From: Selaginella moellendorffii
Taxonomy: Eukaryota > Plantae > Lycopodiophyta
Assembly (NCBI RefSeq): GCF_000143415.4
Contig: NW_003314286.1
Coordinates: forward strand, 1,177,718 to 1,241,717
DNA: 64,000 nt
Direction: 5' to 3'
Of this stretch, positions 14,101-55,147 are shown piece by piece; position 1 is the first letter of the stretch; each line of letters starts with the position of its first letter. Position numbers and translations under genes: made by a program. The notes under the pieces are model-generated. The model was not told where the DNA came from and searched no databases. It saw only the letters and a list, made by a program, of their open reading frames with translations.

Positions 14101-17100
14101 CATATATAAACTCAGATGTAGATTTATGCCTTTTTAACATGCTACTCCTTGGGGGATAGGCCCACTCTTGGGGACCTTCCAATGCTAATACAAGTGGTGA
14201 TATACTTGATCACCAATAAAAATTGGACTAAGGAATAGTTCCGATACTAAATTGTAAGAAACTAAAATTTCCATTTTACTTTAATCACTTAACCACACCT
14301 TTAACCACTTGCAGTAGTTTCACTTACAACCTCCATAATTATTATTTCTAACTTAGGGACATAATAAGCTTGTGAATGGCATTTATACCACTTAGCCTTT
14401 ACACTTGGTCTAAGGGTTCCACGTGTCCAATCCTATGAGAAACACCTAAATATACTATTGATATATCAGCTTATTACACTAAGATTATGTTCATTTACCT
14501 TTGTCTCATAAGTAGTCCAAGACCACCCATACCATAGTTTCATCTCCCAAAGACCAAGCTATCTATTCATGAGTGGTCATCCCAGCATCCTTAGGATACT
14601 TGGAGGCATAAGAAACACCTTTCCCCAATATCCCTTCTTTAGTTTCTACCAAGTCCTTCTCTATCCACAGCTATACTCACTAACACCACCATTGGGTTAG
14701 GGTTGAAAGCTTGATTACTAACTCCCATTAACTTTTAGGACTTCCTCACTATGTGATTGTATCTTTAATCACTACACAAGATGACTATTCCTTTTTCTTT
14801 CCATAGTTCAGGATATTGGGATTACATTTTGAAACATTATGGCCCTATACAAGGATTATGGGTACTTTCCCCACCTTCAACTCTTAGGTCCTCTAGCTAT
14901 ATGGCTAGAGTGAAGTTCCAATGAGCCATGCAAGGTATCCAATTATGTAGTGCTATCCACATTTGAATTGGGAACATTGACCATTCGATCTCCTAGAAGA
15001 GCTAAAGCTAGCTCTTGAATACTTTATCAAATTACCCCACTTGTCCATCCATGTTCACTCTAGCCTTAAACTCTTTAATGGTTATATCATCACCCACCAT
15101 ATAGGTATAACTCTCCTTGGTCACATTAGCCTTTCTTGGCCAAATTAGTTCCATTAAAATCCTCCCTCTACTATCCTTTTGGAGCTCATTAAACCCCCTA
15201 GGGTTTGGGAGACAATCACTTTAGGCTTTCACCCTTGGACTTGGATTTTGACTTGGACTTGGACTTGGACTCAGCTTAGGCTCGGTCTCGGCCCCGGTCT
15301 TAGTCTTAGTCTCAGTCTTGATCTAGGTTCTGGTTATAATCCCCATTTTGGAGTCCTTCTCGGACTCCATCTTGGATCCCTTCTTGGACACCTTCTCAGA
15401 CTTTATATCGAACTCCTTCTTGGACTCTATCTCAAACTCTTTTTCGGATTTGATCATAAGACTTTGACGTGTCAATTCTTCTTGTGTCCTTTTTTAGAGA
15501 CTTATTCACCAATTGTTTCACTTGAGCATTTTGTTTGAATTTCCACCCCCACTCTCAACTTTCCAAGTCAGAGATTTTGATCTAAATATATTATGCTTGT
15601 TGAACTTCCACTTTGACCACCACCATATAACACCCTTTTGGCTCTACTTTGGGGCTTAGGGATTTGTGTCTCACAAGAAAATTCACCTTGCATTTGGTGA
15701 GCCATGGCTTTGGCATAATTTCTAAAGCCTTTAATTCTAGAAACTCTAGGTGACTGTGATTTATAAAACAAAACAAAATATGTATTAAAATCTTAATAAA
15801 TATAATTACCTTTTTGAGATTGAAGGCAACTCACAAAATCCTCTAAGCTAGCATTTGAAGAACCTATATTCTTCAATAGCAAACACTGACCTATTAGAGT
15901 CATGTATTGCTTCTACAATAGAACCACTATTTACTGTGCAATCAATCATAACACTATCTGGTGGGCAATAGAGCTTAAGCAAGACTTGCATCACCAACAG
16001 AATTTGAAATTAGTACACTGGAAATGTGTTATAGATTTGCTCATTCACAAGATTGGGTATAATGTCAGTGGAATTATTGTACCCAAAATGTGTAATGTCA
16101 ATAAAACTGTATTCTCGCTATCATGAAACCCATTATGTGTGTTTTTGTAAAAGGTATGATAGCTCCACATCATAACCTAGAAAATAAGAAAGTTTAGAAA
16201 TTAAATAAAAATATAAAATACATACTCACCTTTTCAGGCTTCCCTTGGATGCCCCTAGTATCAACGCTAATGGGATCCATGATGCGCTTGAAAGAGAATA
16301 ACTTCAAATGAACTTTTGCTACATATATTATACATTGTTCATACATTCAATTGGGTTCATTCAATAGGATGAAGACAATATGGCTAATTTTGAGGATAAG
16401 TGCTTCCAATAAAAGGAATGCATCATGTATGTGGTCGGGTGTGAGAAAATTCTAGTCCTCAACTTTTCCATCAACATCTAAAAAACCGTATAAGAAGTTA
16501 AAGAGAATAAAGTTCGCAACAAGGAGTAAGGGCCTTTGTATCTTTTGACACCAATAATCGAACTAACACCGTATATCCATATTCATGTCATCTTCCATGA
16601 AAGATGATAACAAATTATTGAAGGAGCCAATAAAGACACCCACAATGCCTCGATTGTTATCGAAGAAACATGATGGATCTATATAAGAGTTAAGTGAATG
16701 ATAAAAGCAAGGAATAATATACTACTATCATATAATGTGTTATTGATAAGAGTTTTTTCAACTCCTCATCATGAGCATCTCGTCGAGCTGAAATGAAATT
16801 ACTACCAATAGTCATTGTTGCAAAAAACATATATTACCACCTTTGGTTTGTATAATTCACATTTGCTTACCTCAAGATTAACGTGATATTTTATGCACCA
16901 CTTGATTATCATTATTTACTGGTGGAACCTGATGTGGATCTTGGCTATCTGATGGTTGAATTAAAGTCTGATTTTGGCTGTTTGGTGGTGGAATATGAAC
17001 TTGATCTGAAGCTTCCTCATCCTCCTCTTCATTATCACTTACATCACCATCATTACAAGAATTGATAACTTCCTTTTGGTCTAGTGTAGGGGTCTCCTTC

Positions 17101-18146
17101 CCTAGGAATTCCAACTCTAAAGGGCACTCTATTTTTTGTGCATTCGGAACTTTCGTAAATATTCTTGGGTATATTCCTCCATCCTTTACACCCTTTGCAA
17201 TAAATCAAGTGCAAACTAGTGCCTCAAATAACATGTCTTTATATCAAAGATACTTATAAATAATACATATTTAGGGAAGATTTTAGAAATCATGTTATAC
17301 CTGTAAACTACATATCATATGAATAAGGTTGACCATGTTGGAAATCATAAATTGTTGTGCTTGTAAACTTCTTTGGCAACCACCCGTCTTCAATCCTTTT
17401 TAATGATGTGTGGATGTATGTGTTGAAAAGACATAAATGTGCTATCTAGATTATCACTAATGTATAGTGCTAAAAGATTCACTTTCACCTATAGCATATG
17501 TGATGTAGACATCTCTTCTCATCATATTCTCAAATACTTTTAGCAATCCTTTCTCTTTGTTCATTAAGTAGATATTGAGGAACTCTAAAATCTTTATATG
17601 TTACTTGTATGGAAGTCTCAAATTTGTAATATTATAAATCATGTCATTTGGAGTTTTGTTCATTACAAAAGTAACATATGTGCAATTGAGAAAAATTAAA
17701 CATGATAAATAACTTTCATTTATGAGAAAAAAAATTTAGCAGTCTCTAGCTACTCTTTTAACTTGCAATTGTCTATAATACATACTAGTTTTTTCAACTT
17801 TGAAGACTTTGCATATTGAATTTTCTGCTCAATTTGTATGAGATCAGTAGAGACCTCTTCCCAACTCTTCTCTAGATACGCAAATTTATAAGCATTTTTC
17901 TTGATCTTCACCAAAGGCTAGAAATCAAAACAATAAAAATATGTCTTTATAAAGTGAAAGGGAAAGATATACTTTACACCACAAAGTGAGCATAAAATTG
18001 ATTGAGTTGTTGAACCATATTATACCGTTATTTCAAGTGCACGAGTGCTGAATAAGTGTTGTAAGATCATCATTATAATATTGATAAATATCATCCTCAC
18101 TCAAGTTTGCCAAAAATCAGAGTTGTTCAATGTCATGAATAAGGTT
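8184..18146 (-). pseudogene. Decayed multi-exon gene with beta-class amino (N4C/N6A) DNA methyltransferase-like domain, split by the LARD at 8258-15675
   Basis: Exon ~16678-16230 has VANFILFNFLYG (DPPY-like motif IV, 16485-16499). Exon 16176-15810 has LLKLYCPPDSVMIDCTVNSGSIVEA...RSVFAIE (motif I, 15920-15946). A 53-nt GT-AG intron lies at 16229-16177. The last exon resumes across the TSD and ends ...RNQYVDDEAKES* at 8184. Confidence 0.6.
8258..15675 (-). mobile_element. Old non-autonomous LTR retrotransposon (LARD family A): 5' LTR 15675-14253, 3' LTR 9879-8258
   Basis: Reverse-complement homologue of the 55197-63005 element along its length. Decayed PBS ~14238-14249, PPT at ~9880-9891, TSD GGAAA (8253-8257) / AGAAA (15676-15680), heavy C>T/G>A decay. 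Confidence 0.85.
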
Positions 18147-19020: not shown

Positions 19021-20383
19021 TCTCTCATCCTAGCTATTCATTCTGAATAACCTGAATCTCAACCGTCACGATATCTTTGATTTTATTTTATCTTATCATT
19101 TTATTAAATGTGAATTATAGTTTAATGATGATATAACTAGCACCTGTCAATATTTTAGTTATTAGAGATATGATATTACTTTTTTCAAATTGTCTAGAAA
19201 GGATACATTCTTAGTACATATTTTGGAATTGTTACAGGAACTTTAAAGAGTATAAATAAGGCACATTGAAATATATTATACTATATTAATCTATAAATGG
19301 ATGAATCCTCATCAAAAAATTTATTTTATGTTGTATTAGATCCTAAATAATAGGCACATGGTTTAAATATCATTGAGCAGTATTCATAATTATGGATAAA
19401 ACTCGAGTTATACTAAGAATCAAATCTATCATTAAAGAATTATCATTACTTAGCACTTAAGATTTGATAAGCTTTATCACCACCTAGCACTTAAGATTTG
19501 ACAACTTGATACATCACACATGCTAAGAGTTAAATTGGATCTTTTGGATTGACACACTATAGTAGAATGTCATTATTGATATCATTATTAACTAACTAAC
19601 TTTACACGTTGAAAATCCTTCCTTAGATCTATGTGTATACATACATCAAACATCACAATAAACAATAGTAATATTAATACTGTCACACTTGCATATGTTA
19701 AATTTGCTATAGACTTTAAATTCATTTTATATGTTATTAATATTCTTCTTATTGGTCTCCTTAAATTTCAATTTATGTTTCACTATAGATTTTTACAAGT
19801 AGCATAAAGAGAGAGAGAACTGCAAAACTTATTAAGGATAGAGATGTTTTTTCTATATTTTTTAGATCACCCACCTCTTTCATTCTTTTAAAGTATTGTT
19901 TATGAAAGTTTTTATGTTAGCGTTTTGATTTTCGTCTTAGCTCTATTTCTTTAGAAGCTATAATTTGCAATGACACCGATATAGTTGCATGTTCGGAATT
20001 TCTTTTTTCCAGTGTGGGTGAGGGCAGACAGCAATAGAATTTATAGAATTCAGTGAATGTAAAACAAAAGTTAATCATCATCCTCTCCTCCTCTTTTAGT
20101 TCAAGTAAAGAAGTCATGCTAGTGCTAGTACCGAATTCACTAGCTCCATCTTCAGTAATATTCAAAGCCGTTAGTGATGCTTTCCTTCATGCCTCTCAAT
20201 CGATATACGTTTGTTTTTGTATAAACCTATGAGCGAGCTTTTATCTTTCTATAATGGCAATATTTTCTTCGAGCTACCACCTCTTGTCAGTAGCATAGGT
20301 TCCAATAGAAGGGGATAGAAACCAAGTAGAATGTCTACAATTGGTGTAAGATCAAGACCACATTTCCAACATTTTAAAAATAA

Positions 20384-20406
20384 AGCTCTATTTCGTTAAA
20401 GTGGGA
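20384..20406 (+). repeat. Left terminal inverted repeat
   Basis: AGCTCTATTTCGTTAAAGTGGGA. Confidence 0.9.
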
Positions 20407-21042
20407 TTTATTCAGTAAAATGGGACTAGGTACAAATTTTCAAGTATTTGAAAATGACGTGAAATTATATGTTTTTTGTCCAAGGGCTAGACATATCTGG
20501 GGCATGGTGACTAGCGCGGTGACTTTGTGTCCAGACTGAGTCCATCTGGTTGTATAATAAATCTCATTGTCAAGGTGAACAAGCCGAATCTGAAGTTAAA
20601 GAAGAGCGATGGCATGCGCGCACACACTATTTGTTTGTTCATTGAGCGTGTGGTGAGCTTTCCAAGATGAACGTCATTCCTATTAGCCAAACATATAACT
20701 TAATGGTGAGAACATTTAGATATTATTCAATGTTATCTTTTTCTAACGAATCTAATTGTGAAGGTGTAGCAAGAGGCATTGCTAGTCTGGAGAAGTCATT
20801 TAACTCATTTGACCCTTAGTGTATTTTCATGAAACTAAATAACATTCATATTATTAAGGAATTTCTCTAGTACCTTTTTTTTACGACATAGAGGCTTGCA
20901 TTTCTTTCAAAGGTGATTTAGTAAAAGGCCTGAGGGCACATGCCATTCTATTTCTCAGACCGGTATTAAGATATACTAGTGCAAAGGGAAAAAGGTATTT
21001 GGTGATCAAGTAAATGGCATGAGGGCACACGCCATTATAAGC

Positions 21043-21300
21043 CTAAGCGCTAGTGGACACCTCCTTTTTGGTACTCTCAGCGGTACTATCATCCTTCTCC
21101 GGGTCAGTTGTTTTGCTTTGGATTGTTGTCTCTAACGTTACTGGGGCGTTCTCGATAGTTGTTAATGTTGCCGTTTGTTCAGAAAAATGATCACCTGGAG
21201 TATAGTACGGGGAGTTTGGAAGACTTATATATTCTACATCTTCACCTATCTCCTTCTCCGTCTCCTTTTCTGCCTCACTTACAGATTTTGTGCTTGCCAT
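21043..21300 (-). CDS. Small acidic/Thr-rich ORF inside the DNA transposon (hypothetical)
   Basis: ATG at 21300 opens MASTKSVSEAEKETEKEIGEDVEYISLPNSPYYTPG... (85 aa), a GC-richer island in AT-rich subterminal DNA. Confidence 0.3.
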   Translation of the reverse strand: MASTKSVSEAEKETEKEIGEDVEYISLPNSPYYTPGDHFSEQTATLTTIENAPVTLETTIQSKTTDPEKDDSTAESTKKEVSTSA

Positions 21301-22013
21301 GAGAACGCTCTTCACCCTAAAATATGGAGTTCGTTGTGTTATAAAAGGAAACCAACACACACGCTACAAGGGAATGATGGTACATAAAGCACGTAAGCCC
21401 ACAATATGGGTTTATGTGCCATTAATATGGGCCATACGCCATATTATTAGATTTATGCACATGTGATTGGTAAATGAATATGTCACATCATCTTTGTTTT
21501 ACCTCACACACTATATTAGGCCTAATGAACCATATCACATGTGCGGACATGCTATATATATGGAGAAGTATTATGCAAGGATAGAAAAATTCAATGCATG
21601 ATTGTGGAGAGCAATGGCATGAAGCCACATGCTAAATAACATTTTAGAGAAAGAATTAAAATAGAAACATGCAAACAGTACTGAGTGGACCAAGACTTAG
21701 AAGTGCACAATTGAATGAGGTATTTCTAATAAATATTTCACTCACCTCATATAGGAATGGCTACCACTCTCAAATGGCGTATCGCCTCATGCCATCACCT
21801 CGCAATTTGTTATAACAATCCGATGAATTCATATTCGGCTTGTTCACCTTGAACTTTAAGTAAGATTTGCTAGAACAACTAAGAATTTATACTTGTTATT
21901 TGTATCATCTCACATAGGAATGGCGTAAGGCCACATGCCATCACGCCTCCTCTGATTCAGATTCGGATTGTTCACCTTGAAATAAAATACATTAGAAACT
22001 TAGTAAAGGAATA

Positions 22014-25000
22014 TTAATGAATCTCACCTTGAACCCGGGTTATGAATGCTCTTGCTGCATCTCTTGCATGGTCTGGCAAGGTGATGGTGGCACTCTGCTT
22101 CCGCATCCAACCATGCACAACATTATCCACCGATATGCTCATGCTGGGATCCCTTGGATTTAGCACCCATCTCTTTTCTAGGCAATCCTTCGTATATCCG
22201 GAACTTGGCTTGAACCACTCCACAGTTATATTGAAGGAGTTAGTTTCCGCGTCCTCCTCTGCATCAGTGATGCAGCGCCCCACCCATATCATTTGTTTTT
22301 TATTACTGGGTCTAACAAGCACGACCATTCCTTTGCAGACCTGTACTGGATTGAATGCTGAATCCGGCTTCTTGTTCCTCGGCCCACAATAGTGATCCTC
22401 AACATCGTTATCTATCACTGCATTTCTAGAGGACATTGTTCCGCTACTATCTGGTGCTCTGGGTTCTGGCCAAAAGGACTCTTCCAATTCTTCATATACA
22501 ACCGGCCCATTTTGGATAGCAGATATAATCTTCTCCCAGTATTCGAGCAAAGGCTTGCACCTCTGAAAATAGGATTCTCCACCAAACACCAACCCCCTCT
22601 TCCAAAAGGCAATATGCTGTCTAATCCTGGCCACTATACTTTCCTGGTCTTTGAGTCCATCCGGGTGCATCGGCCGTGGGGAACCCTGAGGAATCATAGG
22701 TTCCCCAGTTATGGGATCTCTCTTGAAGAGTTCAATGCGTCCACTGGCAGCCACACTGTGTCCCATTCTCTCATCTTGTACCTCATCACTGGAGCACCGT
22801 CACGCATGCTGAAATGAAACTGAAGAGGCTTGGAGTGGCCAATCAACGTTTTGGATCCGTCCCTGATGTAGCCTCTTACAAACCCCTTAAAGTCTGGAAC
22901 CTCTGTCACAAGTGCAGCTTCAACAGTGCCTTTGATGCAATTTTGGAATTCATCGTAGAGTTGTGGGAGGGTGAGGACATTGGATCGCCGGAGGGACTCT
23001 GCTAGGTGACTGAACATGGCATCGACGTCTTCATGAGTGTGCCCAACCATGAGAAAGCCAAGTGTAACCGTTTCAAATATGCCTTTGGCAACAAGCATCG
23101 CCAAGTACGCAAAGACGTACATGTTTTTGTTCTCACTGCCAGCATTGTCTGTTTGGAGCAGAAGATGGGGTGGAAGGCCACATCGGCCGCAAGAACTTCC
23201 TTGAGATTCTGCTTCGTTTGGATGAGGCTGTGCATTCACCGGGCGACCAGCCTCGTCGGAATAGCATGAGGCCTCACGTGATAACCCTACAATCTGACGG
23301 CTAACATATTCACTGGGATGGCATGGGGCCCCATGCGATACTGCAAGCCTTTGCTCCTCCTCCAGCTGAACCCTGTATGGGGTTCGATAGACAAGGGCCT
23401 TATGCAAGGGTTGGCCGTTCAGCTCAGTCTGTGCACTTTGTAGAGACCTTAAGTGTTTTGCTAGGGACGCAATCATCATGTTTGCACCCCCGCCACCCCA
23501 TAGAGGTACAAAGAAGTTCCCATAGTTCTGGGCACCATGCCCATGAGCGATTATGCCAAACAGAGACATAGGCAGCTGCATGGATGAAGAGATTGCCTTG
23601 GGGGCAGGATTGAGTCGAGGTAAACACGTCTTTTTCTGGTCCATTTTGTCGTGGATGATGCAGAGGTAAGAGTTAGGTCTCTCCATGGAGAGAATCCTGT
23701 TATGATAATATGCAGTCCTGCAGCTTCTCTGCTCGATGTTGTGGTCGAGCCGCCTTCTAACCAACGTCTCTTGCTCTTGAGCGCTGCAAGAATTCTTCGA
23801 CAAAGCCATTTTGATAGCAGTGCACTCGTCACACTTTGAAAAGCTGGAGTACTTTCCTATACTCACATCCCTGAACCTGTTGCTCCACAATCTACTAAAT
23901 CTAGATTGGCTCAGCTTCCTGTAGCCATTACTCTAGAGTTCCCGATTCACATCTTCCAATATGGCCCCTTTGGTATACATGGAAGGGAGAACTCGTTGGG
24001 TGTCTCGTGTTCCATCTTCCAAGAGGCGGGTTTTATGTGGTTGCTGCTCGCTACATGTCTCGACAAACCTCTTGAAGATTGCCTCTCCATATACAACATG
24101 ACCCCTGGTTTTGTGCGTACTGTCGTTCCCATGGACTGCCTGTTGAACCCTTTGTTCCTCGAACTCAGTTTTGATTCTGTAGAATGTGCTTCGAGGGACT
24201 CCATAAATGATTCTCCATGCCTTCATGCAGACCAAACCCCTCTGGAAGACCATGCCCCCCACCTGATGTTCTGAAGCATCAACAGATGACCGTAATGCCT
24301 CATACACAAAATTGCGAGCTGCCTTCCAGGACAATGTCTTGTATCTTGCTCTCTCCTCTTCAATAGCATCCCAATCAGCATGTTGATAGCACCTCCTCTT
24401 GCAACAAGCAACTGTCGAGACCATTCGAACCTCCATCGCCATTTTCTGCCTTTTCGGTTCGTTGCTCAGATCCCTTTGGCTGCGCTTTAGGAAGGTGTAC
24501 TTTCTTTTCCCATGAAGAGATGTTCTGTCATCAGTTGTAGTGGTGTTTGATTGTGAATCCTTCACATTCTCAAACACTAAGTGCCTCAATTTCCACCGCA
24601 CAATGCTTCTAATAGTCAGACTGTTTTCTTCTGTGTCAACAACCTCTAAAATCGCAACTCCAATATCATCCCAGCCCAATTCTTGATTAGCAACTGCATC
24701 TCTTGGATCGACAACTGTTTTCCACCGCACAATGCTTCCAATAGTCAGACTGTTTTCTTTTGTGTCAACAACCTCTAAAATCGCAACTCCAATATCATCC
24801 CAGCCCAATTCTTGATTAGCAACCGCATCTCTTGGATCGACAACTGTGGCTAAGCCCTCAGCTACCACCTCCCCCTCGGGGTTGTTTAGAAACACCTTTG
24901 CCTGAATCCATGTAGCACGGTTCTTAAGATCCACGGAGGGAACATGCATCGCACTTGCGCTGTCCCCAACATCTGCTTTCTTCTGAAGATTTTTCAAGGC

Positions 25001-25210
25001 AACAACAACATTTACCCCGACGACCATCTCTCCTCGTTCAATAGCAACCACATTCCCATCGAAGACAGTCTCTACTGATACAGCAGCATTGCCTTCCCCA
25101 AGCCTTTGACAGTGTATAACAAAGTTCCGATCCATAGACACAAGGGTCCCTTTTGCAACTCTCTTCCCACCATTCAAAATGTAAACCTTTTCCCTAACCC
25201 TGAAGGCCAT
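22014..25210 (-). pseudogene. Sola-like DDD transposase (~1065 aa), one premature stop (23933-23935) and one frameshift (~22740)
   Basis: Three ORF-track pieces join into one gene. Motifs KCDEC, CIIHDKMDQKK, LLQTDNAGSENKN and FLMVGHTHEDVDAMFS indicate an RNase H-fold catalytic core. The N-terminus has Tnp1/En/Spm-C-like repeats. Confidence 0.78.
24590..24847. repeat. In-frame 129-bp tandem duplication in the transposase N-terminus
   Basis: TVVDPRDAVANQELGWDDIGVAILEVVDT[K/E]ENSLTI[G/R]SIVRWK occurs twice, nearly identical. Confidence 0.95.
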
Positions 25211-25574
25211 TCTGAAAGTGCAGAAAAGAAGTTAAGACCATACAAAAAATGATTGGAGAATGGCCTAAATCATAACATACCAAACAACCTCAATAGCATG
25301 AGGCCACATGCCATTATTCAAACATGCTATTGACACCCACGTGAAATTTCGCATTCACAAAATTGGCATGAGGCCTCATGCCATCTTGATATACACACAG
25401 CTACAGGCAAGTAAAAACATACATGACAATACGCTAGCCATGAAATTGCAAGGGCCCAAGATGGCATGTGGCCTCATGCCATTTCTAAATGTGGTCCTAA
25501 GCCATTCCATGGTGAACATACCAGGAAGCACAAGTGCCGAATATCAAGAGGAAGCGGTAGCCACACCAAAGACA

Positions 25575-25770
25575 GTGCCGCTCGCAACACCGCAACTACT
25601 CGTAGCGCCGCTCACAACACCGCAACTGCTCGTAGCGCCGCTCGCACAAACTGCCACTCACATAAACTGCCGCTCGCAATGGCGCTCGCAATGCCGCAAC
25701 CGCTTGTAGACGCATAAACCATAGCTCACAACGCCGCTTACACAAGCAGCGCTCACTGCGCTCAGCGGAA
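25575..25770. repeat. CG-rich tandem repeats (GCCGCTCGCAACACCGCAACT...) upstream of the transposase
   Basis: 30-bp and shorter imperfect units. Confidence 0.7.
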
Positions 25771-26506
25771 CCAAGAACACGGTGCACAAAAATGATAGAC
25801 CTAGGAATGAGTTCGAGAATTCAAAAATAACACACGCTTGAACGTCACATCAAATCCTCTGACAAACCAGATCTTATGATTCCTCTGACAAATTTCAAAC
25901 TGAGTAGCTTCTAGACTTTGCTGTCGAAGGTTGAACTTTGTCACATCATGTCCTTGCCTCAATCCAGCTGTGCCATGTTAGTGATTCGAACTTTGCCATG
26001 CCGTGTCAGTGATCCGTGCCAAGATTATTCGCCGTGTAAAGGAATAATTATGCTGTGTGTGTACGTCCATTTATGGCAATATAAGGCCACATGCCATTCA
26101 AAGAATAATGCTAGGCGAGCATTTTTTTGGTGCATTTTTGGGTTCAAAATTGCATGAGCCCACACGCTATAAAGTTTACCTGTACCAAAAATAGAAACAG
26201 CTTTATTTACTTGGGAATTTAAGTGGTTGAGGCATTTTTAACCTTACAAACACATGCCCTACTTACATTCCTTTGGTTGCTTAAAATTCAAAAATATTAT
26301 AAACCTTTCTTTTTGCATTTTCAATGTTTTCAATTATGGTTTTTGATTTTCGAAGGACCAGCCTAGTAATCTATTTGCATCCCGTCATGTTTATAGCTAG
26401 CTTTCGTTTGTCCCCTTCGCTAGCCTGAGATACATCTGCTCGGCATCTGCCTCTTACAGCATTTGCCCAGAAAGGGCATCTTTCTTCACGCAGCATTTGC
26501 CACATG

Positions 26507-26532
26507 TTTAGGGTTTAGGGTTTAGGGTTTAG
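26507..26532 (+). repeat. Interstitial plant telomeric repeat (TTTAGGG)3.7 / telo-box cluster
   Basis: TTTAGGGTTTAGGGTTTAGGGTTTAG. Confidence 0.8.
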
Positions 26533-27384
26533 CAATTCAGTAGCTTGATAAACATGCAAATATAGAACTTGATGCAAAATCCTTTGATATGTCACAATGC
26601 CCCTAGGACCATAAACACATTTCAATAGAGAGGGTCCTTTCATTTCATAACTCCTTACGTAGATCTTGGTGAAACCAGAGTTAGTGAAGTTAGTTTCTTG
26701 TGGTCCCACATCTGATTGTGATGTCCCTTTGCAGTGTCGATGGAAAGGTCAATGCACACCAAACTGTAAAATCTTGGAGCAAAATAACGGTCGGATCTAT
26801 GGCAAATGCCCCTGAAACATTGTAAGGCTCGTGTGGTCTCATGTGGTCTTTGATCAAGATGCTTCTTTGCAGGGTCATCAAGAAAGACATTGTATACCAT
26901 TCTGTAAAATCTAGTTATGATCTAACGGTTGGATCTCCAGAAAACTCAAAAAAATCTCGCGCGTATTAGAATATTCTAGGAATATACTCCTATGTGCCCC
27001 TCAAAATGGCATGCGGCCCCACGCCATTCAAGAGATAACGCCAGATGACGCCGAGCATTTTTTGGGATTTGTATACCATTCTTTATTTAGCTGAACATCT
27101 GGCATTTTTGGAAATACAAGATGCTTTGGAATATCCAATCATGCATGGTATAAATATGGCGAGGGTATTAAATGATATCCCAATCATGATCTTTCTTTTG
27201 GATTTCGCGTGCATGCAGTTCGAGGAATGATGACGTTGCGGATTTCTTTTGGATTTCACGTGCATGCATGCGCGCGGCGATCCAGAAATTAATGGTGGCG
27301 CCCAAGTCCGAGGAATGATGACGTGGCGGGATTACCAACCGTCGTGACATTTTGCGCGTGTGAGGTTAGGTTTTGCATTTTTCT

Positions 27385-27552
27385 TCGTACTCGCGCTCGC
27401 ACACTCGCGCTTGCATCGCGCTCCCACTCGCGATCACGCTCACATTCGCGCTCATTTACCTTCTCTACAGGTTTCTCGTGTGCATCGGCGTCCACTCGCG
27501 CTTGCATCACACTCGCGCTCGCATCGCACTCGTGTGCATCGGCGTCCACTTC
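27385..27552. repeat. CG-rich CACTCGCGCTCGCATCG repeats upstream of the cargo gene
   Basis: Imperfect short repeats with retained CpG. Confidence 0.7.
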
Positions 27553-27757
27553 AAGACACACCCAGTTTGTAACTTTGCCGCCAACTCCGCCGCCCACTCT
27601 GCCACCCACACGCAGCCCACTTGGTGTCCCGGGAGATTTCAGCGCCACTCTCCAACTGTAAGTGGCAGAGTAGCCTTGCTGCTAAGATCCACTGCACACA
27701 CAGTGCACATTCGCCAGCGAGTCCGGCCTCGATTGTCACGCCTCCATTCAGCTTCAA

Positions 27758-30700
27758 ATGGTAAGTCTTTTAGGCCAAGTAGAAAATGGCATGAGGCCAC
27801 ATGCCATTCAGTAGCAACATTGGCATGTACCGATTGGGCTCTCGAGTGTAGTCCGGTTACAGATGGTGTGTAGCCTCACGCCATCTTAAGATGCAGCCTT
27901 AAGACATCTGATGCAGTGGTGAATGGCGTGTGGCCTCACATTATTTCCAGCTGGTAGCTTTTCATCTGTCAGCTCTAATTGTTGTGCATTTCTGAACAGG
28001 TGAGGAATTGCGTTCTTCTTCTAGCCACTGTCAATGTGGATGCAGAGAAGGGGGAGGAGCTCACCAGTTGGACTTTCGGGATGGAAGGCGAGGATCTGAG
28101 GCTGTACAACACAGATGGTGGGAGAAAAGAATGCATGGGGATCCTCATCCAAGTGACAGACACTCCATGTAGTTCCATGCAAGAATATGGACTGGCACTT
28201 GTGGTAGAGACAACGTTTGCCTTCAAGATCCACCTTGCACATCCTAGCGGCTTCCCGGAGGGGGGTAGCGGCTATGAAGAATTCCTAGAGGGAGCTAGGG
28301 AAAGGTTGTCCAGGAGGCCCACAATTTCAAAGACGCTGTGGGTCTATGAAGATCATATGGAATCCACGGACCTCACTTACGGCGATGTTCAAAAACTATA
28401 TTCCAACATTGAGCCGTTGAGAGTGCCTCCAGTTCGCGAAGCAAAGGGGAAGGGGGTCGATCTGGAAACTACCCCGAAGCAGAAAAGGGTGGTCAAGCTC
28501 AAGCCGACATCTGACTCTCTTGCTCCAAAAAAGAAGCTACTCGGTGATGCCATTGCCTCGGGTTCGAACACTACACCCACCAAAAAGAAGAGCCGCAAAG
28601 AGTAAAAAGAGCAAGAAGAGGCAGCAAAAATCGTCGCAGATAATAGTACTTGTTACTATTCCAACAAAGTATATACAATCGACGTGAGCCATATCGACAT
28701 CCAAAGCAAATACAACCACAGGCTAGTATCTGATGAGTGGGTGGAGAAACTGAAGCAGAAGATGCTGGCAAGTCCAGTAACACCCGACATCGCAGACGTG
28801 ATCCCCTACTACCGAACAATGAAGGGCGAGACGAGGTTTCCAGACTTGATCAATAGGAAGGTGTTGGACGATCAGAACATTCGGTTCTATGCCGTCTCCG
28901 GGCAGCATTCTAGCTTGGCGATGCAAGAGATAGTTGTGGATATTATGGTGGGCGAGGAGGTCAAGAAAGTCTTCAAGACAAGAGTTGTCCGCCTGATAAA
29001 AGGCAACTCGCCCCTCCGATCTATCATATACATCTCCCACGCGCAGAATGTCAAGCAAGAAACGTGCTACAAATCGGGTCTGCACGAGACATTGGCACGA
29101 ACACGGAAGCTCTGGGTTCAACTGAAGAAGCCACAAAAACCAGGACAAGGACGTGCACTAGCAACTAGCGCCTGGCAGGTAAGCCTCGTTGCATGTGGCA
29201 TAACATGTGGCCTCACGCCATTTCCATTGCAGGAATTCTCGAGTCTTCTCTCGAAAACACTGGGGGTCAATGACACACTCAGCATCTATAACATTCTACT
29301 CGCGACAAAAGTTGTTTTTGACAAATGGGTAGATGTGCTGAGGAGGTACCATGACGGGGAGTTACTAAACTCAATGGGTGTGGAGGACGGCCGGAAGCCC
29401 AATGATTTGAAGCTCAACGCCTTGCGTTTCTCGCGGTCTCTAGATGACGACGACCTTCTGACAGTGGCTAATGCTCTTCTACGTGGTGAGGTAGTCCTCA
29501 ACAAGACCAAAATGACTCCCGGCCATATTGTGACATACGAGGACTTGTGCACGACTCTTAGAGCTCGTGCGCTATTGAAGGATTGGATCTTCGAGCAAGT
29601 GGCCGTGGAGAGGGTGAGCATCGACACCACGCAAGAGATGATGGAAGCGCTGGATTTGTCAAATGAAGACATCGACGAGTACGTGAAGGAGGCCCCCAAG
29701 TTCATCGATCTGCTGCGGGATGCCACGAAAAGTAAAGCTGAGAAGTTGGATCAGTATCCAAATTTCATTAAGAGGGATGTCGACCGCCGGCTTCAGAAAC
29801 AGGTCGACCCCGCAGCAGAGGCCTATCAAGAACCTTACCGGGTATACGTGAATTCGGATGAGGATCAAAGGTGGAGGAGCATCGTTTCCCGCGGAGATGA
29901 GCAGGTCAAGAACATCTTTTGTGTGATGGACTTCACAAATGAGGAGATCACTCATGCAGACGAAGTCAGCTCCATCATTGACTTAATGGTGGGACTTGCA
30001 GAGATGGAATCTTCAGTCCACTATATGATCTACGACTCCGAATCCTATCACAAGTTCTAGAAGGCCTTGAACGAGGTGAAGGCTCGGTTGAAAGGCAAGG
30101 AGATGCAGGAGATCCATGGGATAATGGGTAAGAAGAAGATACCGACGAATGTCCGCATCTTCACACTCGCCCTTGTTATTGGTCTCGCAGCAGAGTGGGA
30201 CTGGAGTGACTTCCCAGCTTCGTTCGACATGGCCGATCGAATTAATCTGAGGGAGGTCAATTTACCCGTGCCTGAGGAACTGAAGACGACTATGGAGCTT
30301 TCGAATCCAAAGAAAGTTCCAGGTGCAGCATGGGAAATGCTCAGCTAGGTCTTCAATGCAATAGTGGGTGACTCCAAGGGCAAATGCGTTGTCGAGTACA
30401 ACTGTGGCGGACTATTCTTTCGAGCCGCACTACTCAAGGGTGTCTCGTGTGTTGCGGTGACAAACTCCATTGAAGAGGTGACTTCAATGGAGCATATAAT
30501 TACAGTTGCCAAAGAAAAACAGTATCTTCTCTGCGAACCTGGTGAGTATGCACTTTAAGTTTAAATGTTATCTCACAAGCTCTGTATGCAGGAGCGTGGC
30601 CACCCCCAGATGCTGAAACGGCGTTAACAGCTACTGTTGAAGATACCCATGTTGGGCCGAGCTCACAACCTACACAAGGTAAGGTCACGTGAGGCCTCAC

Positions 30701-33350
30701 ACCATTTTGATTATAGATCGTTGTGAATATTCAGACACGAGGACTGAAAAGCGCACTGGTGGCGCGTCGAAGAAGGACAAACAGACAAGCAATAGGAAAA
30801 AAGGAGGTACAAATTATATTTGCAATAGCGTGTGGTCTCATGCCATTCCTTGCAGGAGACACTTCTTCAAAGGCAAAACAGGCAAGCACCAGCCAAGCTT
30901 AAACTGACAATAGTCATAAAAAGCGAAAGCATGTTGGACAGTCGTCGGGATCAGAGGCATTTGATTCGAAAAGGAAAAAGGGCAACGAAAAGATGATAGG
31001 TAATGCCTCGCGGTTATGGCGTGTGTGCTCATGCCATTCATTGCAGATCAAGGGCTGAGTGAAAGCAGCCAGTCACCACCTCCTGACTCAGATTCCTATG
31101 GCAGACTCCCCTTCCCCAATCTCAATGGAGAGGTACAATGGATGAGGGATGCTTTTCAAGTCAGGGCCACGTTTTTCTCATCTCGTCATCTTCGAAGGGT
31201 CCAAGAACGTGCAGAAACCATGTTAAGACAGTCGGGTGAGGATATGGTCCTAGGTCACGCACTAAAACAGGCTATGGATGTCTTGTATTTTGAGATGGAG
31301 ACTCGGCCAGATGATTTTCCCAAGATGGTCCTGAAAAAAAAAGCCATCCAGCCTGAGCAGCCTATGGAAGAAATGCAAGAGGGGGATGAGGAGCCAGAGA
31401 AAGATAATGAGTAGGAAGAGCAGAAGGACGAAGAGGAGGACAAAGAAGAGGAGGACGAAGAGGACTTGGATGGTCCTCACAATGGTGACAATCACAATAA
31501 CGACGACGACGATGATGATGACGATGGCCAGCCTGAGGTGGCCAAAGAGCAGCGGAGGAAGGTCATACAAGACAAACCATCAGGTAAATAATAGTACATC
31601 CATTCCTAACCTTTTACCATTTCTAACATTGTCCATATAGGTCGCAGAGCAAATGGTAAGTAGAGATTATTCAGTTGAATTTACAAACTCTAGCCTTTAG
31701 TGTCGAGGAAGGATAGTGCCAAGCAAGGGTCGAAACGTATGTCCAATCCTTTAGAATCAGCAGTGCACCCAAGTGATATCGGTCCTAGTTCCTCAATAGC
31801 AGTTGATGGTAAATACAGTATAGTCGATTCAATGTGCTAATGAGTTTGTTTTCAGTAGCACGGGAGGATACCATCTCAATCGAAGGGAGATATTTGGACA
31901 TGCATATGGATCCGCCAGTGGACTCTACTTGCCTACAAGAGTCATCAGAGCTGGTGGAGGCTACTATCCATATCAATGCCAAGCAAGCTGACCACGCTCC
32001 ACTTGATGCTGCCCATACCACTGAGTCAATCTTGTCCACGTATCCAACTGACGGTGACCAGGCGCCATTGGACCCGCATGAGGCCGCCCCAGCCGCCGAG
32101 CCGGTCGTATCCTCATTTCCAACGGACTCAACGTGTGCCCAATCGTCTGACTACGCGCCGTTGGAACCTCCCTACACCGCCCTTGCTGCCTGTTTGGTCA
32201 TGTCCACTTTGCCAACGGAGGCACCAGCTGAAATGGCGTGTGATCACATGCCATCGGAACCACCCCATGCCACTGTTGAGCCAGTTGTACTAGAGTCTAC
32301 AGCTAAAATGGCATGTGCCCACACGCCATCGGATGCGATTGACCCCACATTGCAAAGGAGAGTATTTCCGCCCTTCACGTTTCCTCGACCAAAACCCTCT
32401 CAATGACCATCGGGAGCACCATTCGCTAATATTGTAGATGGTAAAATTGACTTGTACCATTTTTTATGCTGACGCATTTCATTTCAGAGTCACGGCGAAG
32501 GTACTGTATCGTTTTTGATCTGAACGGTGTCCTTTTCTCCCATGAGCGTGGCTTGTCCTCGAATGTCACTACACCCTCCAAAGCCTGTGGTCGCAAGTTG
32601 GTCAAAAGAGACAGATTCACATTAATCACATGGGAGAAACTACGGGATCTAATAATGACCATGCGACACTTAAAACAGAGGGCCGGGTTCAATTTGCAAT
32701 TGGGAGTTTGGACATCCATGATGCGCCACAATGCATTAACGTTGCTACAGATGATGCACGATCAGACGCGAGTAATATTACCATTTGACTTTCTTCTAAC
32801 GCAGGAGGATTGCTTGACTATGGTCCATGTGAGGGGTAGCAAGCCCATCTTCGTCAAGCCAGAGGCTGTAGTGATGAACCGGACTGCTAGGTTAAGTGAA
32901 ATCCTCATCATCGATGACTTGCCGATTAAAACTGCAGCGAACACGCACACATATGCAGTGCACCCCATCTCTTGCAATATGGAAACTAGGGAGAAGAAAC
33001 CGTATGTTCTGGGGGACCTTGCAAAACGACTTGGAGCGATGGTGATAGAGAACCGGCCAGTCCAAGAGGTGGCTGCAGAAATCAACCAAATGGCAGATGG
33101 AACGGTATATCAAAAGCCATTTGATCGGATAGACACCAGTCATCATTTATGGCATGTATATTGTCTAGCCAAGCACTATCCGCATCTCCATAATCTGCTC
33201 AACCGGATGGGTTCTTCGACCACTGAACATGAGCGTGGACGTATTAGAGAAGAGATGGCATTACAATTGGATTTAAATCCTGATAGTGTGGAGAGTGATG
33301 AAATTCCAAGATTATTGTATAGGCGTTGGAGGCAAAATATAACAGTCTGA
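27758..33350 (+). pseudogene. 11-exon transposon cargo gene (~1633 aa): ParB/Srx-like domain + degenerate beta-class amino-MTase fold + acidic linker + FCP1/NIF HAD phosphatase-like domain
   Basis: Exons 27758-27760, 28000-29178, 29233-30541, 30592-30678, 30735-30806, 30856-30999, 31047-31583, 31641-31655, 31701-31808, 31856-32440 and 32488-33350 total 4902 nt in one frame, with all introns GT-AG. Six premature stops (28603, 30058, 30346, 30900, 31412, 32404) are each one transition from a sense codon. Motifs: RLVSDEWVEKL...FYAVSGQHS; KKVP...GKCVVEYNCGG...AALLKGVSCVAV; IVFDLNGVL...WTS...ILIIDDLPIK. Confidence 0.8.
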
Positions 33351-33768
33351 GATGGCATGTATTTATTTAAAAATGTAACTTATTATGGCATGGGGTTCCA
33401 TGCCATTGTATTAATATTAAAAGACAATTCTTTGAGAGGATTTGCATTATACTAGAAGTGTTACAGCATGTTATTGGAAGTCTAAGAAGTTGTTTTATTA
33501 ATAAGGGGAAAGTAAAGATTGAATGGGGACTTGGGCTCCACTTAGACTCGGAGCAACTGAGCCAATATTAAAAGGATGGAAAGAAATTGGACGACAATGA
33601 CAAGGAGAAGAGAGAGGTGAAGCAGTGGCAGGGGGAGGAGAAGTGATTGAGTAGACATTTCCTTGTTTAAAATAAAATGGCATGTGCCTCAATGCAATTG
33701 AATTTTGTTATATTTATATACTATATAAAGGTTTGGAAACCTTATTTTACAAGTGGGATAATGACAAT

Positions 33769-33791
33769 TCCCACTTTAACGAAATAGAGCT
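33769..33791 (-). repeat. Right terminal inverted repeat
   Basis: TCCCACTTTAACGAAATAGAGCT, the exact reverse complement of the left TIR. Confidence 0.9.
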
Positions 33792-45901: not shown

Positions 45902-46293
45902 TTTATTGTCCTAAAACCCTAGATTGTGGAAAATAAGAGGAGTAGTCCTCTTGTGTAGTGATTAAAGATACAATCACATGGTGAAGAAGTCCTAGAGGTT
46001 AGTGGAAAGATAAATTTAAAGTGTTATACTTAAACATTGCAATTAGGTTATAATGTGATTGTGGATATAAAATTTAAATTGTATTTGCAAATCTTATGTA
46101 GATGCAAATGGTGTAAGCATGGTTTATCTTATTAAATCACATATTTTACCTAGTGATCAGGCCTTTAGGCCTTGACTTAGTGGTAGTGTCGATGAGCACA
46201 ATTATGGATGGATGGGGACTTGGTGGGGACTAAAACAGGGACATTGGGAAAGGGTGTTCTCCATATCTCTGGGCATTTTAAGGATGTTAAATT

Positions 46294-47002: not shown

Positions 47003-47009
47003 ATTCAGT

Positions 47010-50000: not shown

Positions 50001-50183
50001 TTATGGGGGATAAATCACTTAAGTTGTAATATAGTAAGTCAATGTCGTAAAGGGAATGCTCATTGTCAAAGAAGGCTATCATTAGGACACCCAAACACTC
50101 TAAAACACCAAGAAGTAGTATTTGGTGTCATGAGGGCATTAGATAAGGCCCAAGAGACTAAGTCCTTAGCAAATGATAGATAG
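47010..50183 (+). mobile_element. LARD family A copy of intermediate age (5' LTR 47010-48655, PBS 48659-48670), interrupted at 50183 by the chromovirus
   Basis: Colinear with 55197-~58551 of the young copy; homology stops at the chromovirus LTR. Confidence 0.88.
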
Positions 50184-54630: not shown

Positions 54631-54677
54631 GTATTGGGTATTAAGTCAAGTTTGATAGCACTAACACTTTTTGACAG
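54631..54677 (+). other. 47-nt GT-AG intron-like insert in the integrase core
   Basis: GTATTG...CACTAAC...TTTTTGACAG; removal restores YHP(Q)TDGQTERVNR. Confidence 0.75.
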
Positions 54678-55095: not shown

Positions 55096-55147
55096 GTAAA
55101 AATGCATGTATTCCTTTAAATGAATTGATCTTAAGTTCCTTAAGTAG
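55096..55147 (+). other. 52-nt GT-AG intron-like insert just before the integrase GPY motif
   Basis: GTAAAA...TAAGTAG; removal restores KLTQRFAGPYEI. Confidence 0.75.

What the first reader, a model, noticed from the sequence alone, without database searches (positions are those of the whole stretch)
20384..33791. Giant TIR transposon pairing a ParB/MTase/phosphatase cargo gene with its own palindrome array: candidate self-targeting system
Seen: perfect 23-bp TIRs enclose a transposase gene, a divergent ~1633-aa cargo gene and ~24 copies of one 22-bp palindrome that I found nowhere outside the TIRs. The flanks rejoin into one MULE gene, which fixes the boundaries. Established: bacterial ParB loads at palindromic parS sites, and Arabidopsis VANDAL elements encode VANC proteins that bind motifs accumulated in their own non-coding DNA to counter silencing. 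Inference: an element-encoded protein recognises these palindromes and acts on the element's chromatin, transcription or transpososome assembly. I do not know this combination as a described system.
Basis: partly seen in the sequence, partly recalled or inferred. Interest (0 to 1): 0.93.

Follow-up and report, generated by a model that had tools for sequence, protein, structure and literature searches.

The report
Two-gene plant transposon with palindrome array
This is a decayed copy of a very abundant two-gene DNA transposon in a land plant. Its relatives in other plants each carry their own repeated 20-24-bp palindrome, which suggests an undescribed way for a transposon to recognise its own DNA.

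Summary
The core observation holds. Perfect 23-bp terminal inverted repeats (20384-20406 / 33769-33791) enclose a minus-strand DUF7869 transposase gene, a divergent plus-strand accessory gene of about 1,600 aa, and 24 copies of one 22-bp palindrome. None of the palindromes lies in the other 50 kb of the window.

The claim that the flanks rejoin into a MULE gene found no support.

This copy is dead: it has four in-frame TAA/TAG stops and a strong C-to-T bias against the family majority. The family itself is very abundant in the source organism, and this scan has noted other copies in the same genome.

The accessory protein has a ParB/Noc/KorB-like N-terminal fold (Z about 10). It also has a degenerate N6/N4 DNA-methylase-like module and an FCP1/NIF-like phosphatase end.

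A Riccia sorocarpa element has the same gene pair and 59 copies of a different palindrome. Three related elements with a transposase but no detectable accessory gene also carry their own palindrome arrays.

So the array is a trait of the transposon lineage, probably binding sites for an element-encoded protein. Pairing with the ParB-like gene is possible but not required. No description was found in the literature.

The parts
20384..20406 (+). Left terminal inverted repeat. The 23-bp core is perfect; the inverted repeat extends to 20383-20409 at 26/27.
33769..33791 (-). Right terminal inverted repeat, the reverse complement of the left one.
22017..25210 (-). Transposase gene, decayed. It has an N-terminal region with a Cys-rich stretch and a psq-like helix-turn-helix. 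The DUF7869 DDE/D core spans 22712-23932. The C-terminal part spans 22017-22799 in another frame.
23933..23935 (-). In-frame TAG in the transposase. A 94%-identical copy from elsewhere (P0028) reads Gln at this position.
24590..24847 (-). Tandem duplication, 2 x 129 nt at 98% identity, inside the transposase N-terminus. It is absent from copy P0028.
25211..27978 (.). Region between the two divergent genes. It holds eight palindromes in all. One triplet sits 80-270 bp upstream of the transposase ATG (25293, 25363, 25461). Another sits just upstream of the accessory gene (27786, 27863, 27923). Two more are at 26149 and 27006.
27979..33350 (+). Accessory ('cargo') gene of about 1,600 aa after removal of nine predicted 47-57-nt introns. 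It is interrupted by three in-frame stops.
28606..29178 (+). ParB/Srx-type N-terminal domain of the accessory protein. The family motif is ADxIP...F.A(I/V)SGQHS. The match to ParB, Noc and KorB continues to about residue 320 of the modelled piece 28606-30057.
29860..30541 (+). N6/N4 DNA-methylase-like module. The SAM-binding motif-I block is VVEYNCGG...; DFTN stands where the catalytic (D/S)PP(Y/F) motif is expected. Two in-frame stops lie inside it.
32488..33347 (+). FCP1/SCP (NIF)-like phosphatase domain. The first motif reads DLNGV in this copy.
28603..28605 (+). In-frame TAA in the accessory gene.
30058..30060 (+). In-frame TAG in the accessory gene.
30346..30348 (+). In-frame TAG in the accessory gene.
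20609..21941 (.). Left subterminal palindromes, six copies starting at 20609, 20925, 21014, 21614, 21774 and 21920.
23261..23339 (.). Two palindromes inside a non-conserved insert of the transposase (residues about 169-252 of the core piece). That stretch is skipped in alignments to relatives.
29179..29232 (+). Predicted 54-nt GT..AG intron holding a palindrome (29200-29221). Three similar predicted introns also hold one: 30679-30734, 30807-30855 and 31000-31046.
   Evidence: no RNA support
32233..32329 (.). Two palindromes in the Pro/Ala/Ser-rich linker between the methylase-like and phosphatase domains.
33385..33698 (.). Right subterminal palindromes, two copies at 33385 and 33677.

Best explanation
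Shown:
- This is a mutated, non-functional copy of a highly abundant cut-and-paste DNA transposon of a land plant.
- It has 23-bp TIRs, a DUF7869-type DDE/D transposase, and a divergently transcribed accessory gene.
- The accessory protein combines a ParB/Srx-fold N-terminus, a degenerate N6/N4-methylase-like module and an FCP1/NIF-like phosphatase end.
- The gene pair is conserved in a liverwort element at only 22-38% protein identity.
- Dense arrays of a family-specific 20-24-bp CpG-containing palindrome are a recurrent trait of this transposon lineage.

Inferred:
- The palindromes are binding sites for a dimeric, element-encoded DNA-binding protein that marks the element as 'self'.
- They sit at both subtermini, in front of both genes, and in introns or variable linkers.
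- They would serve to assemble the ends and/or to control the element's own transcription and silencing state. En/Spm TnpA sites and VANDAL VANC motifs work this way.

Which protein reads them is open. Arrays also occur in related elements that carry only the transposase, so I rate the transposase (its N-terminal Cys-rich plus helix-turn-helix region) the more likely reader. The ParB-like accessory protein would then be a lineage-specific add-on that acts on the same element, or possibly a second reader.
For: Element identity:
- TIRs are confirmed.
- DUF7869 scores E=1.4e-43.
- Sixty-two relatives include many in Riccia and Calypogeia.

Abundance and decay:
- 23,735 contigs of a DNA run lay on the 5.7-kb accessory gene, with many internal-deletion joints.
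- The window has T or A where the majority has C or G at 58 of about 73 sites that differ.
- Copy P0028 reads Gln at the window's TAG.

Accessory gene:
- ParB, Noc and KorB are the top PDB matches.
- VIA-align gives Z 9.3-10.1, with 96-98 residues at 2.6 A.
- The Riccia locus L002 has a transposase homologue, a ParB-like part, N6_N4_Mtase at E=1e-3 and NIF at E=7e-11, in the same divergent order.

Arrays:
- Window: 24 copies, none outside the element.
- Riccia L002: 59 copies, all between the candidate TIRs.
- L007 has 20 copies, L008 has 13, L010 about 9, L001 has 12, each with a different sequence.
- None of the 24 window copies lies in conserved coding sequence, which is 47% of the element (P=2e-7).
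- There are clusters just upstream of both genes in the window and in Riccia.

Transposase as reader:
- An HMM of the accessory family finds nothing in L007, L008, L010 or L011.
- L008 is an 8.7-kb TIR-bounded element with only the transposase. A palindrome abuts each of its TIRs.

Precedent: transposases can act as sequence-specific regulators of cognate copies (bioRxiv 10.64898/2026.08.24.746577).
Against: - No binding data exist.
- The TIR sequences do not resemble the palindrome. The transposase would therefore need a second DNA specificity.
- Perfect dyad symmetry is more typical of dimeric ParB/KorB/Noc-type proteins than of transposases.
- A Calypogeia locus has an accessory-like gene and an array but no transposase within 10 kb.
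- Cargo-less elements could be served in trans by cargo-bearing copies of the same family.
- One Riccia element with both genes (L009) has no clear array.
- Only one locus per family was examined, and two of the families come from metagenome contigs of unknown organisms.
- Introns are predicted from splice signals only. RNA runs gave 6 reads and no spliced joints.
Confidence: 0.5

Rival explanations
1. The ParB-like accessory protein is the reader. It binds the palindromes as a dimer, as ParB binds parS, Noc binds NBS and KorB binds its 12 operators on RK2. It thereby brings its methylase-like and CTD-phosphatase-like modules to the element, to shield it from silencing or to tune its transcription.
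For: - The fold match covers the ParB N-terminal domain and runs on through the DNA-binding region of ParB, Noc and KorB (model residues about 20-320).
- Those proteins bind 13-16-bp palindromes at several dispersed sites (established knowledge).
- The window and Riccia elements have both the gene and an array.
- Calypogeia L001 has an accessory-like gene and an array but no transposase.
- The palindrome is unrelated to the TIR.
Against: - Arrays occur in L007, L008 and L010 with no detectable accessory gene. L008 has no room for one.
- L009 has the gene but no array.
- The GERR arginine box of CTP-dependent ParB is replaced by SGQHS.
- The helix-turn-helix part aligns only at about 5 A rmsd.
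Confidence: 0.25
2. The palindromes are not protein-binding sites of the element. They might be small palindromic insertions that spread within the element, some read as short introns. Or they might be hairpin or cruciform-forming sequences that act at the RNA or DNA level, or are tolerated by-products.
For: - Five of about ten predicted 47-57-nt introns consist largely of a palindrome between splice signals.
- DNA contigs of other copies skip 59-63 nt at 30690-30753 and 31008/31012-31072, next to palindromes.
Against: - At least six diverged families each keep a different palindrome of similar length, placed at subtermini and promoters. That is hard to explain without selection.
- There are no copies in 50 kb of flanking window.
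- An 11-bp stem is too short for Dicer substrates (established knowledge).
- The skipped segments do not coincide with the predicted introns.
Confidence: 0.12
3. A host factor, not an element protein, reads the palindromes. Candidates are a methyl-CpG-sensitive or CATG/RY-type transcription factor. The element would have accumulated such sites to recruit or evade host chromatin machinery.
For: - All the palindromes contain CpG, or its TpG/CpA decay products, near the dyad.
- The window motif contains GCATG-like cores.
Against: Each family has a different sequence, including three different ones within the single genome of Riccia. A conserved host factor should impose the same motif.
Confidence: 0.08

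Closest known systems
Arabidopsis VANDAL (Mutator-like) elements with VANC anti-silencing proteins (PMC5735166, PMC10398659)
   Same: - The element carries an accessory gene beside the transposase.
- Short motifs are accumulated in the element's own non-coding DNA.
- Related families carry different motifs.
   Different: - The transposase is DUF7869-type, not MULE.
- No sequence or fold relation to VANC was looked for or seen.
- The motifs are 20-24-bp perfect palindromes rather than short asymmetric repeats.
- Arrays also occur without any accessory gene.
- No hypomethylation effect has been shown.
En/Spm (CACTA) TnpA and its 12-bp subterminal binding sites; transposases as regulators of cognate copies (bioRxiv 10.64898/2026.08.24.746577)
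   Same: - Repeated binding sites lie in the subterminal and promoter regions of the element.
- An element protein both aids transposition and controls the element's transcription or methylation.
   Different: - The transposase superfamily differs.
- The sites here are dispersed over the whole 13 kb, including introns.
- The only link to TnpA is a chance-level Pfam Transposase_23 hit (E=0.03).
Bacterial ParB family: ParB/parS, Noc/NBS, and KorB with 12 operators on plasmid RK2
   Same: - The N-terminal ParB/Srx fold matches (Z about 10).
- The logic is the same: a mobile replicon carries several dispersed palindromic sites for its own dimeric protein.
   Different: - This is a eukaryotic, intron-containing gene.
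- It has no GERR/CTP-binding arginines.
- No partition ATPase partner is present.
- It is fused to methylase-like and phosphatase domains.
- Binding is not shown.
Phage and plasmid ParB_N + N6_N4_Mtase fusion proteins (Pfam PF02195 + PF01555), and the ParB-HTH-fused Dam-type methylases of chlorophytes and chytrids (PMC4738411)
   Same: - The domain order is the same: a ParB-like N-terminus followed by a beta-class amino-methylase-like module.
- Such phage proteins appear among the structural neighbours.
- Chara braunii look-alikes are named N-4/N-6 DNA methylases.
   Different: - The catalytic (D/S)PP(Y/F) motif is not conserved in this family: it reads DFTN, DVTH or DSAN.
- There is an extra FCP1/NIF phosphatase domain.
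- The gene is carried by a eukaryotic transposon.
Zator (IS630-Tc1-mariner group, derived from bacterial TP36/ISAzo13; PMC7386202) and Sola superfamilies
   Same: - The spacing between the second and third acidic residues is about 39-42, and a Q.DNA motif is present.
- Once DUF7869 clusters are excluded, 94 of the 100 nearest named clusters are ISAzo13/PF07592 transposases.
- Other notes of this scan call it Sola-like with a 4-bp duplication.
   Different: - There is no Pfam PF07592 hit, and the language-model scores are low (0.66-0.69).
- The target duplication could not be read in any of the three families.
- No Sola or Zator reference sequences were available to compare.

Membership tests
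Class II cut-and-paste (TIR) DNA transposon | Terminal inverted repeats at both ends | tested here: met
   23-bp perfect core, 26/27 over 27 nt. The core 21-mer occurs only at the two ends.
Class II cut-and-paste (TIR) DNA transposon | Encodes a DDE/D transposase | tested here: met
   Pfam DUF7869 E=1.4e-43. Acidic residues in QTDNAGSENKN and GHTHEDVD were read from the sequence. The RNase H fold was not modelled.
Class II cut-and-paste (TIR) DNA transposon | Target-site duplication of fixed length | tested here: inconclusive
   Either AGCT/AGCT, which is palindromic and may be part of the TIR, or TAA/TAG. No clear duplication in Riccia L002 or in L008.
Class II cut-and-paste (TIR) DNA transposon | Many copies, including internal-deletion derivatives | tested here: met
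   23,735 contigs of DNA run X1 were laid on the stretch, 11,836 of them at >=99% likeness. At least 30 deletion joints were reported.
Zator superfamily | Transposase related to bacterial TP36/ISAzo13 (PF07592), with a 3-bp duplication | tested here: inconclusive
   No PF07592 hit at E<=10. Weak language-model proximity only. The TAA/TAG flank matches 2 of 3. The 3-bp rule is recalled from Bao et al. 2009, not read here.
Sola superfamily | DDD transposase linked to Sola1-3 by iterative search, with a 4-bp duplication | not tested
   No Sola reference sequences were available. The AGCT/AGCT reading is compatible. Scan note s1-341714 reports a 4-bp duplication at another copy but is unchecked.
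ParB/Srx superfamily | ParB/Srx N-terminal fold | tested here: met
   AlphaFold2 model of 28606-30057: pLDDT 70 overall and 80-90 in the domain. ParB, Noc, KorB, PadC and sulfiredoxin fill the top ranks. Z 9.3-10.1, rmsd 2.6 A over 96-98 residues.
CTP-dependent ParB clamps (ParB, Noc, KorB) | GERR arginine box for CTP binding | tested here: not met
   The aligned family motif is (I/V)SGQH(S/T), closer to the DGQHR/Srx type.
CTP-dependent ParB clamps (ParB, Noc, KorB) | Helix-turn-helix domain that binds a cognate palindrome | tested here: inconclusive
   Alignments extend to model residue about 320 over the DNA-binding domain of 6t1f, 7nfu and 8qa9, but at 4.5-5.3 A rmsd. Binding is not testable here.
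Beta-class N6/N4 DNA methyltransferase (PF01555) | Motif X to motif I block (HP..KP ... VLDPF.GSGT) | tested here: met
   The block is conserved as HPGSK...VLDFFSGG in Riccia and VVEYNCGG in the window. Pfam hits on that profile region score E=2.4e-4 (L005) and 1.1e-3 (L002). Both are below the gathering score.
Beta-class N6/N4 DNA methyltransferase (PF01555) | Catalytic motif IV (D/S/N)PP(Y/F/W) | tested here: not met
   The aligned position reads DFTN (window), DVTH (Riccia), and DATT or DSAN in relatives. The fold model was too poor to judge: pLDDT 46, with M.RsrI only at rank 10.
FCP1/SCP (NIF) phosphatase, HAD superfamily | Pfam NIF above gathering score | tested here: met
   Window 21.9 bits against a cut-off of 21.8. 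The Riccia orthologous position scores 42.5 bits, E=7e-11.
FCP1/SCP (NIF) phosphatase, HAD superfamily | DxDx(T/V) catalytic motif | tested here: inconclusive
   The window reads DLNGV, with Asn in place of the second Asp. This copy carries many G-to-A changes, and the state in the family majority was not visible in the truncated table.
VANDAL/VANC-type sequence-specific anti-silencing system | Family-specific motifs accumulated in the element's non-coding DNA | tested here: met
   None of 24 copies lies in conserved coding sequence. Six families have six different palindromes.
VANDAL/VANC-type sequence-specific anti-silencing system | MULE transposase and a VANC-family protein that causes loss of DNA methylation | tested here: not met
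   The transposase is DUF7869, not MULE. No VANC relation was found among the Pfam hits. The methylation effect is not testable with these tools.

The most novel reading that the evidence does not exclude
A widespread eukaryotic transposon lineage runs a plasmid-like ParB/KorB operator system. A ParB-fold accessory protein dimer recognises family-specific palindromes spread over its own element. It bridges or coats the element and delivers a methylase-derived module and an RNA-polymerase-CTD-type phosphatase. The result would be sequence-specific self-recognition that protects or regulates only cognate copies, with palindrome and protein co-diversifying between families.
Probability: 0.2. Interest if true: 0.85.

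Novelty: new variant of a known kind. Interest (0 to 1): 0.62.

Why it matters
How transposons tell their own copies from the rest of the genome is understood in only a few plant cases (En/Spm TnpA, VANDAL VANC).

Here a different and poorly described transposase lineage (DUF7869) shows a simple, computable signature of such self-recognition. Each family has its own 20-24-bp palindrome, repeated 10-60 times, at the ends, at promoters and in introns.

Some families add an accessory protein built from a bacterial-type ParB fold, a methylase relic and a CTD-phosphatase-like domain.

Because motif and candidate readers are both known, the system is directly testable by DAP-seq or EMSA and by cross-family swaps.

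It may also explain the many uncharacterised ParB-like proteins in Chara, cnidarians, molluscs and echinoderms that came up as structural look-alikes.

Tried and rejected
- **Alternative genetic code.** All four in-frame stops are TAA/TAG, which could suggest reassignment. Rejected: the window holds ordinary land-plant genes (PPR-E, SBP). The copy shows a strong C-to-T bias against the family majority. Another copy reads Gln at the transposase stop.
- **Stops hidden in introns.** No GT..AG intron of suitable length and phase removes them.
- **MULE gene across the insertion.** No Pfam signal in the flanks and no continuous frame across the junction.
- **Sequence searches of the accessory protein.**
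  - Pfam, PDB by sequence, and PDB with a family profile gave nothing useful.
  - The exhaustive representative search gave only 13 hits. Two were low-complexity artefacts.
  - The word-indexed profile search returned only one known member.
- **RNA evidence for splicing.** Two RNA runs gave 6 reads and no joints. The 'RNA?' contig run is unspliced across a predicted intron and may be DNA.
- **Fold of the methylase-like module (Riccia ORF).** pLDDT was 46 and the matches were mixed, so this is unusable as proof.
- **Superfamily from the literature.** The papers read give no sequence criteria that I could apply.
- **Selaginella and metagenome relatives (L003-L006).** They have an accessory-like gene only, with no transposase and no arrays, so they say nothing about the pairing.
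- **P0038 locus.** No DNA could be fetched.

Full report
**What is in the sequence**

The window comes from a land plant. It carries an E-class PPR gene (2778-4397, minus strand) and an SBP-box gene (4924-5817, minus strand).

Between 20383 and 33792 lies a 13.4-kb element.
- It is bounded by a 27-nt inverted repeat (26/27) with a perfect 23-bp core. The core 21-mer occurs only at these two places in 64 kb.
- The 22-bp palindrome ATGGCRTGNGGCCNCAYGCCAT has 21 matches at up to 3 mismatches, against 0 expected. All lie inside the element. At up to 4 mismatches there are 24.
- The position counts give the dyad AATGGCRTGnGGCCnCAYGCCAT(t).
- The R/Y positions are CpG in about a third of copies and TpG/CpA in most others.

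**The two genes**

The minus strand (25210 to 22017) encodes a transposase.
- Its middle part is a strong DUF7869 match (E=1.4e-43).
- It has one in-frame TAG (23933) and a frame change near 22712-22799.

The plus strand (27979 to 33350) carries one long gene.
- It stays in one frame from 27979 to 30541 apart from three in-frame stops (TAA 28603, TAG 30058, TAG 30346).
- It continues through a series of 47-57-nt GT..AG candidate introns to a C-terminal NIF phosphatase match.
- Five of about ten candidate introns consist largely of a palindrome between the splice signals.
- I found no RNA evidence for splicing. Two RNA runs gave six reads in total.

**A dead copy of a very abundant family**
- On the 5.7-kb accessory gene, one DNA run of the same organism laid 23,735 contigs, half of them at 99% likeness or more. 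There were dozens of internal-deletion joints, as expected for a high-copy DNA transposon with deletion derivatives.
- Where the window differs from the family majority, it has T for C at 30 sites and A for G at 28 sites, out of about 73. This is the signature of deamination of methylated cytosines.
- A 94%-identical protein from another assembly (P0028) reads Gln where the window's transposase has TAG. It also lacks the window's 129-nt tandem duplication.
- The all-TAA/TAG stops are therefore decay, not a variant genetic code.
- This scan has noted other copies of about 13 kb elsewhere in the same genome. I could not inspect them.

**What the accessory protein is**
- Sequence searches were nearly blank. 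The exhaustive search of 1.84 billion representatives gave 13 hits. The real ones are in Calypogeia fissa, Riccia sorocarpa, Selaginella moellendorffii and unnamed metagenome or Logan contigs.
- Their alignment shows a conserved N-terminal motif, ADxIP...F.A(I/V)SGQHS.
- An AlphaFold2 model of 28606-30057 has mean pLDDT 70, and 80-90 in the first 170 residues.
- The model matched ParB, Noc, KorB, PadC and sulfiredoxin at the top of the PDB list.
- VIA-align gave Z 9.3-10.1, with 96-98 residues at 2.6 A for the N-terminal domain. Looser alignments continue over the ParB DNA-binding domain to about residue 320.
- The arginine box (GERR) of the CTP-dependent clamps is absent.
- In the AlphaFold cluster library the best look-alikes are uncharacterised eukaryotic proteins. 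Their accession prefixes suggest Nematostella, Chara braunii (many), sea urchin, Mytilus and Physcomitrella, but the organism column was blank. Two are named N-4/N-6 DNA methylases.

Behind the ParB-like part is a block that aligns with motifs X and I of beta-class amino-methylases.
- It reads HPGSK...VLDFFSGG in Riccia and VVEYNCGG in the window.
- Two relatives give sub-threshold Pfam N6_N4_Mtase hits on exactly that profile region.
- The catalytic (D/S)PP(Y/F) motif is not conserved.
- A fold model of this module was too poor to use.

The C-terminus is NIF/FCP1-like. The match is marginal in the window and clear at the orthologous place in Riccia (E=7e-11).

**Relatives: the gene pair and the arrays**

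The Riccia sorocarpa locus L002 repeats the architecture.
- A transposase homologue lies on the minus strand.
- A divergent ParB-like / methylase-like / NIF gene lies on the plus strand.
- Candidate 36-nt TIRs lie 16.7 kb apart.
- It holds 59 copies of a different palindrome, with core GGGACGCGTCCC flanked by CTTC/CATG. All lie between the TIRs, with clusters just upstream of both genes.

I then fetched loci around transposase relatives.

| Locus | Source | Genes detected | Palindrome | Copies |
|---|---|---|---|---|
| L007 | metagenome contig | transposase only | CCCACGGGTGwwCACCCGTGGG | 20 |
| L008 | metagenome contig | transposase only | GTATCGGCGGnCCGCCGATAC | 13 |
| L010 | Riccia | transposase only | ATGTTGGGACGnnCGTyCCAACAT | about 9 |
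| L001 | Calypogeia | accessory-like only | GCCTCGAGATnnTCTCGAGGC | 12 |

- A profile of the accessory family finds it in the window, L001-L006 and L009. It does not find it in L007, L008, L010 or L011.
- L008 is bounded by 38-nt TIRs 8.7 kb apart. It holds only the transposase, and a palindrome sits directly inside each TIR.
- One Riccia element with both genes in tandem (L009) shows no clear array.
- The Selaginella relative sits among ordinary genes with neither transposase nor array.

**Reading**

The comparative pattern argues that the palindromes are functional cis elements of this transposon lineage.
- At least six diverged families each have their own palindrome, all of similar length.
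- The palindromes are placed at subtermini and promoters.
- In the window they are excluded from conserved coding sequence: 0 of 24 copies fall in the 47% of the element that is conserved coding (P=2e-7).

Binding sites for a dimeric element-encoded protein is the simplest reading. The function would be comparable to TnpA sites of En/Spm or VANC motifs of VANDAL (PMC5735166, PMC10398659).

Which protein reads them is not settled.
- The ParB-like fold and the dyad symmetry favour the accessory protein.
- Arrays in one-gene relatives favour the transposase. A recent preprint shows that transposases can be sequence-specific regulators of cognate copies (10.64898/2026.08.24.746577).

Any action of the methylase-like and phosphatase-like modules on chromatin or RNA polymerase is speculation.

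**Classification and novelty**
- The superfamily is unresolved. Once DUF7869 clusters are excluded, the nearest named clusters by language-model features are bacterial ISAzo13/PF07592 transposases, but at low scores. That is the group from which Zator derives (PMC7386202).
- Other notes of this scan call the element Sola-like with a 4-bp duplication. The duplication here can be read as 3 or 4 bp.
- Full-text searches for DUF7869, for DUF3723 with ParB, and for ParB-like accessory genes of eukaryotic transposons found no description of this system.
- The nearest published item is a ParB-HTH-fused Dam-type methylase family of chlorophytes and chytrids (PMC4738411).
- I class this as a new variant of a known kind: a TIR transposon with an accessory gene and self-motif arrays.

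Noticed in passing
window 24590-24847: A 129-nt tandem duplication (98% identity) adds 43 residues to the transposase N-terminus. The near-identical copy P0028 lacks it, so it is private to this copy or polymorphic.
   Followed up: partly
window 28133-28220 (contig of DNA run X1): One DNA contig joins 28133 to 28220 with plant telomere-type repeats (TTTAGGG units and their complement) in between. This could be a chimeric or rearranged copy.
   Followed up: no
window 30690-30753 and 31008/31012-31072: DNA contigs of other copies skip 59-63 nt next to palindromes. The skipped segments do not coincide with the predicted introns, so these are small indel variants among copies.
   Followed up: no
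L003 (Selaginella moellendorffii, P0006/P0015): A 450-aa protein matches the helical and methylase-like parts of the accessory protein. It sits among ordinary genes (ArfGap, VQ), with no transposase and no palindrome array. It may be a domesticated derivative.
   Followed up: partly
L004 3318-3941: On a Logan contig, a SET-domain ORF (E=4e-5) lies 2 kb downstream of an accessory-like gene.
   Followed up: no
L008 5404-5462 and 14062-14122: In this one-gene relative a copy of the family palindrome directly abuts the TIR at both ends. A second left-end copy lies at 4829-4890.
   Followed up: partly
L009 14500-18400: A tandem satellite with a period of about 524-543 bp lies downstream of a Riccia DUF7869 element. 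Its units contain short palindromes unrelated to the arrays discussed here.
   Followed up: no
window 20410-20425 and L002 330-345 / 17098-17113: The window's left subterminal sequence has ATTCAGTAAAATGGGA. The left arm of the Riccia TIR has ATTCAGTAAAATAGGA, and the right arm differs by one more base. This hints that the termini are homologous across families.
   Followed up: partly
window 44000-64000: This region is GC-rich and strongly skewed, with overlapping ORFs. Another first-stage note calls it a Ty3/gypsy element with introns in the integrase. I did not examine it.
   Followed up: no
(feature search of window 28606-29178): Fungal DUF3723 clusters score 0.95 against the ParB-like domain. 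From memory, DUF3723 is a recurrent accessory gene of fungal Starship transposons. A possible shared ParB-like fold was not tested.
   Followed up: no
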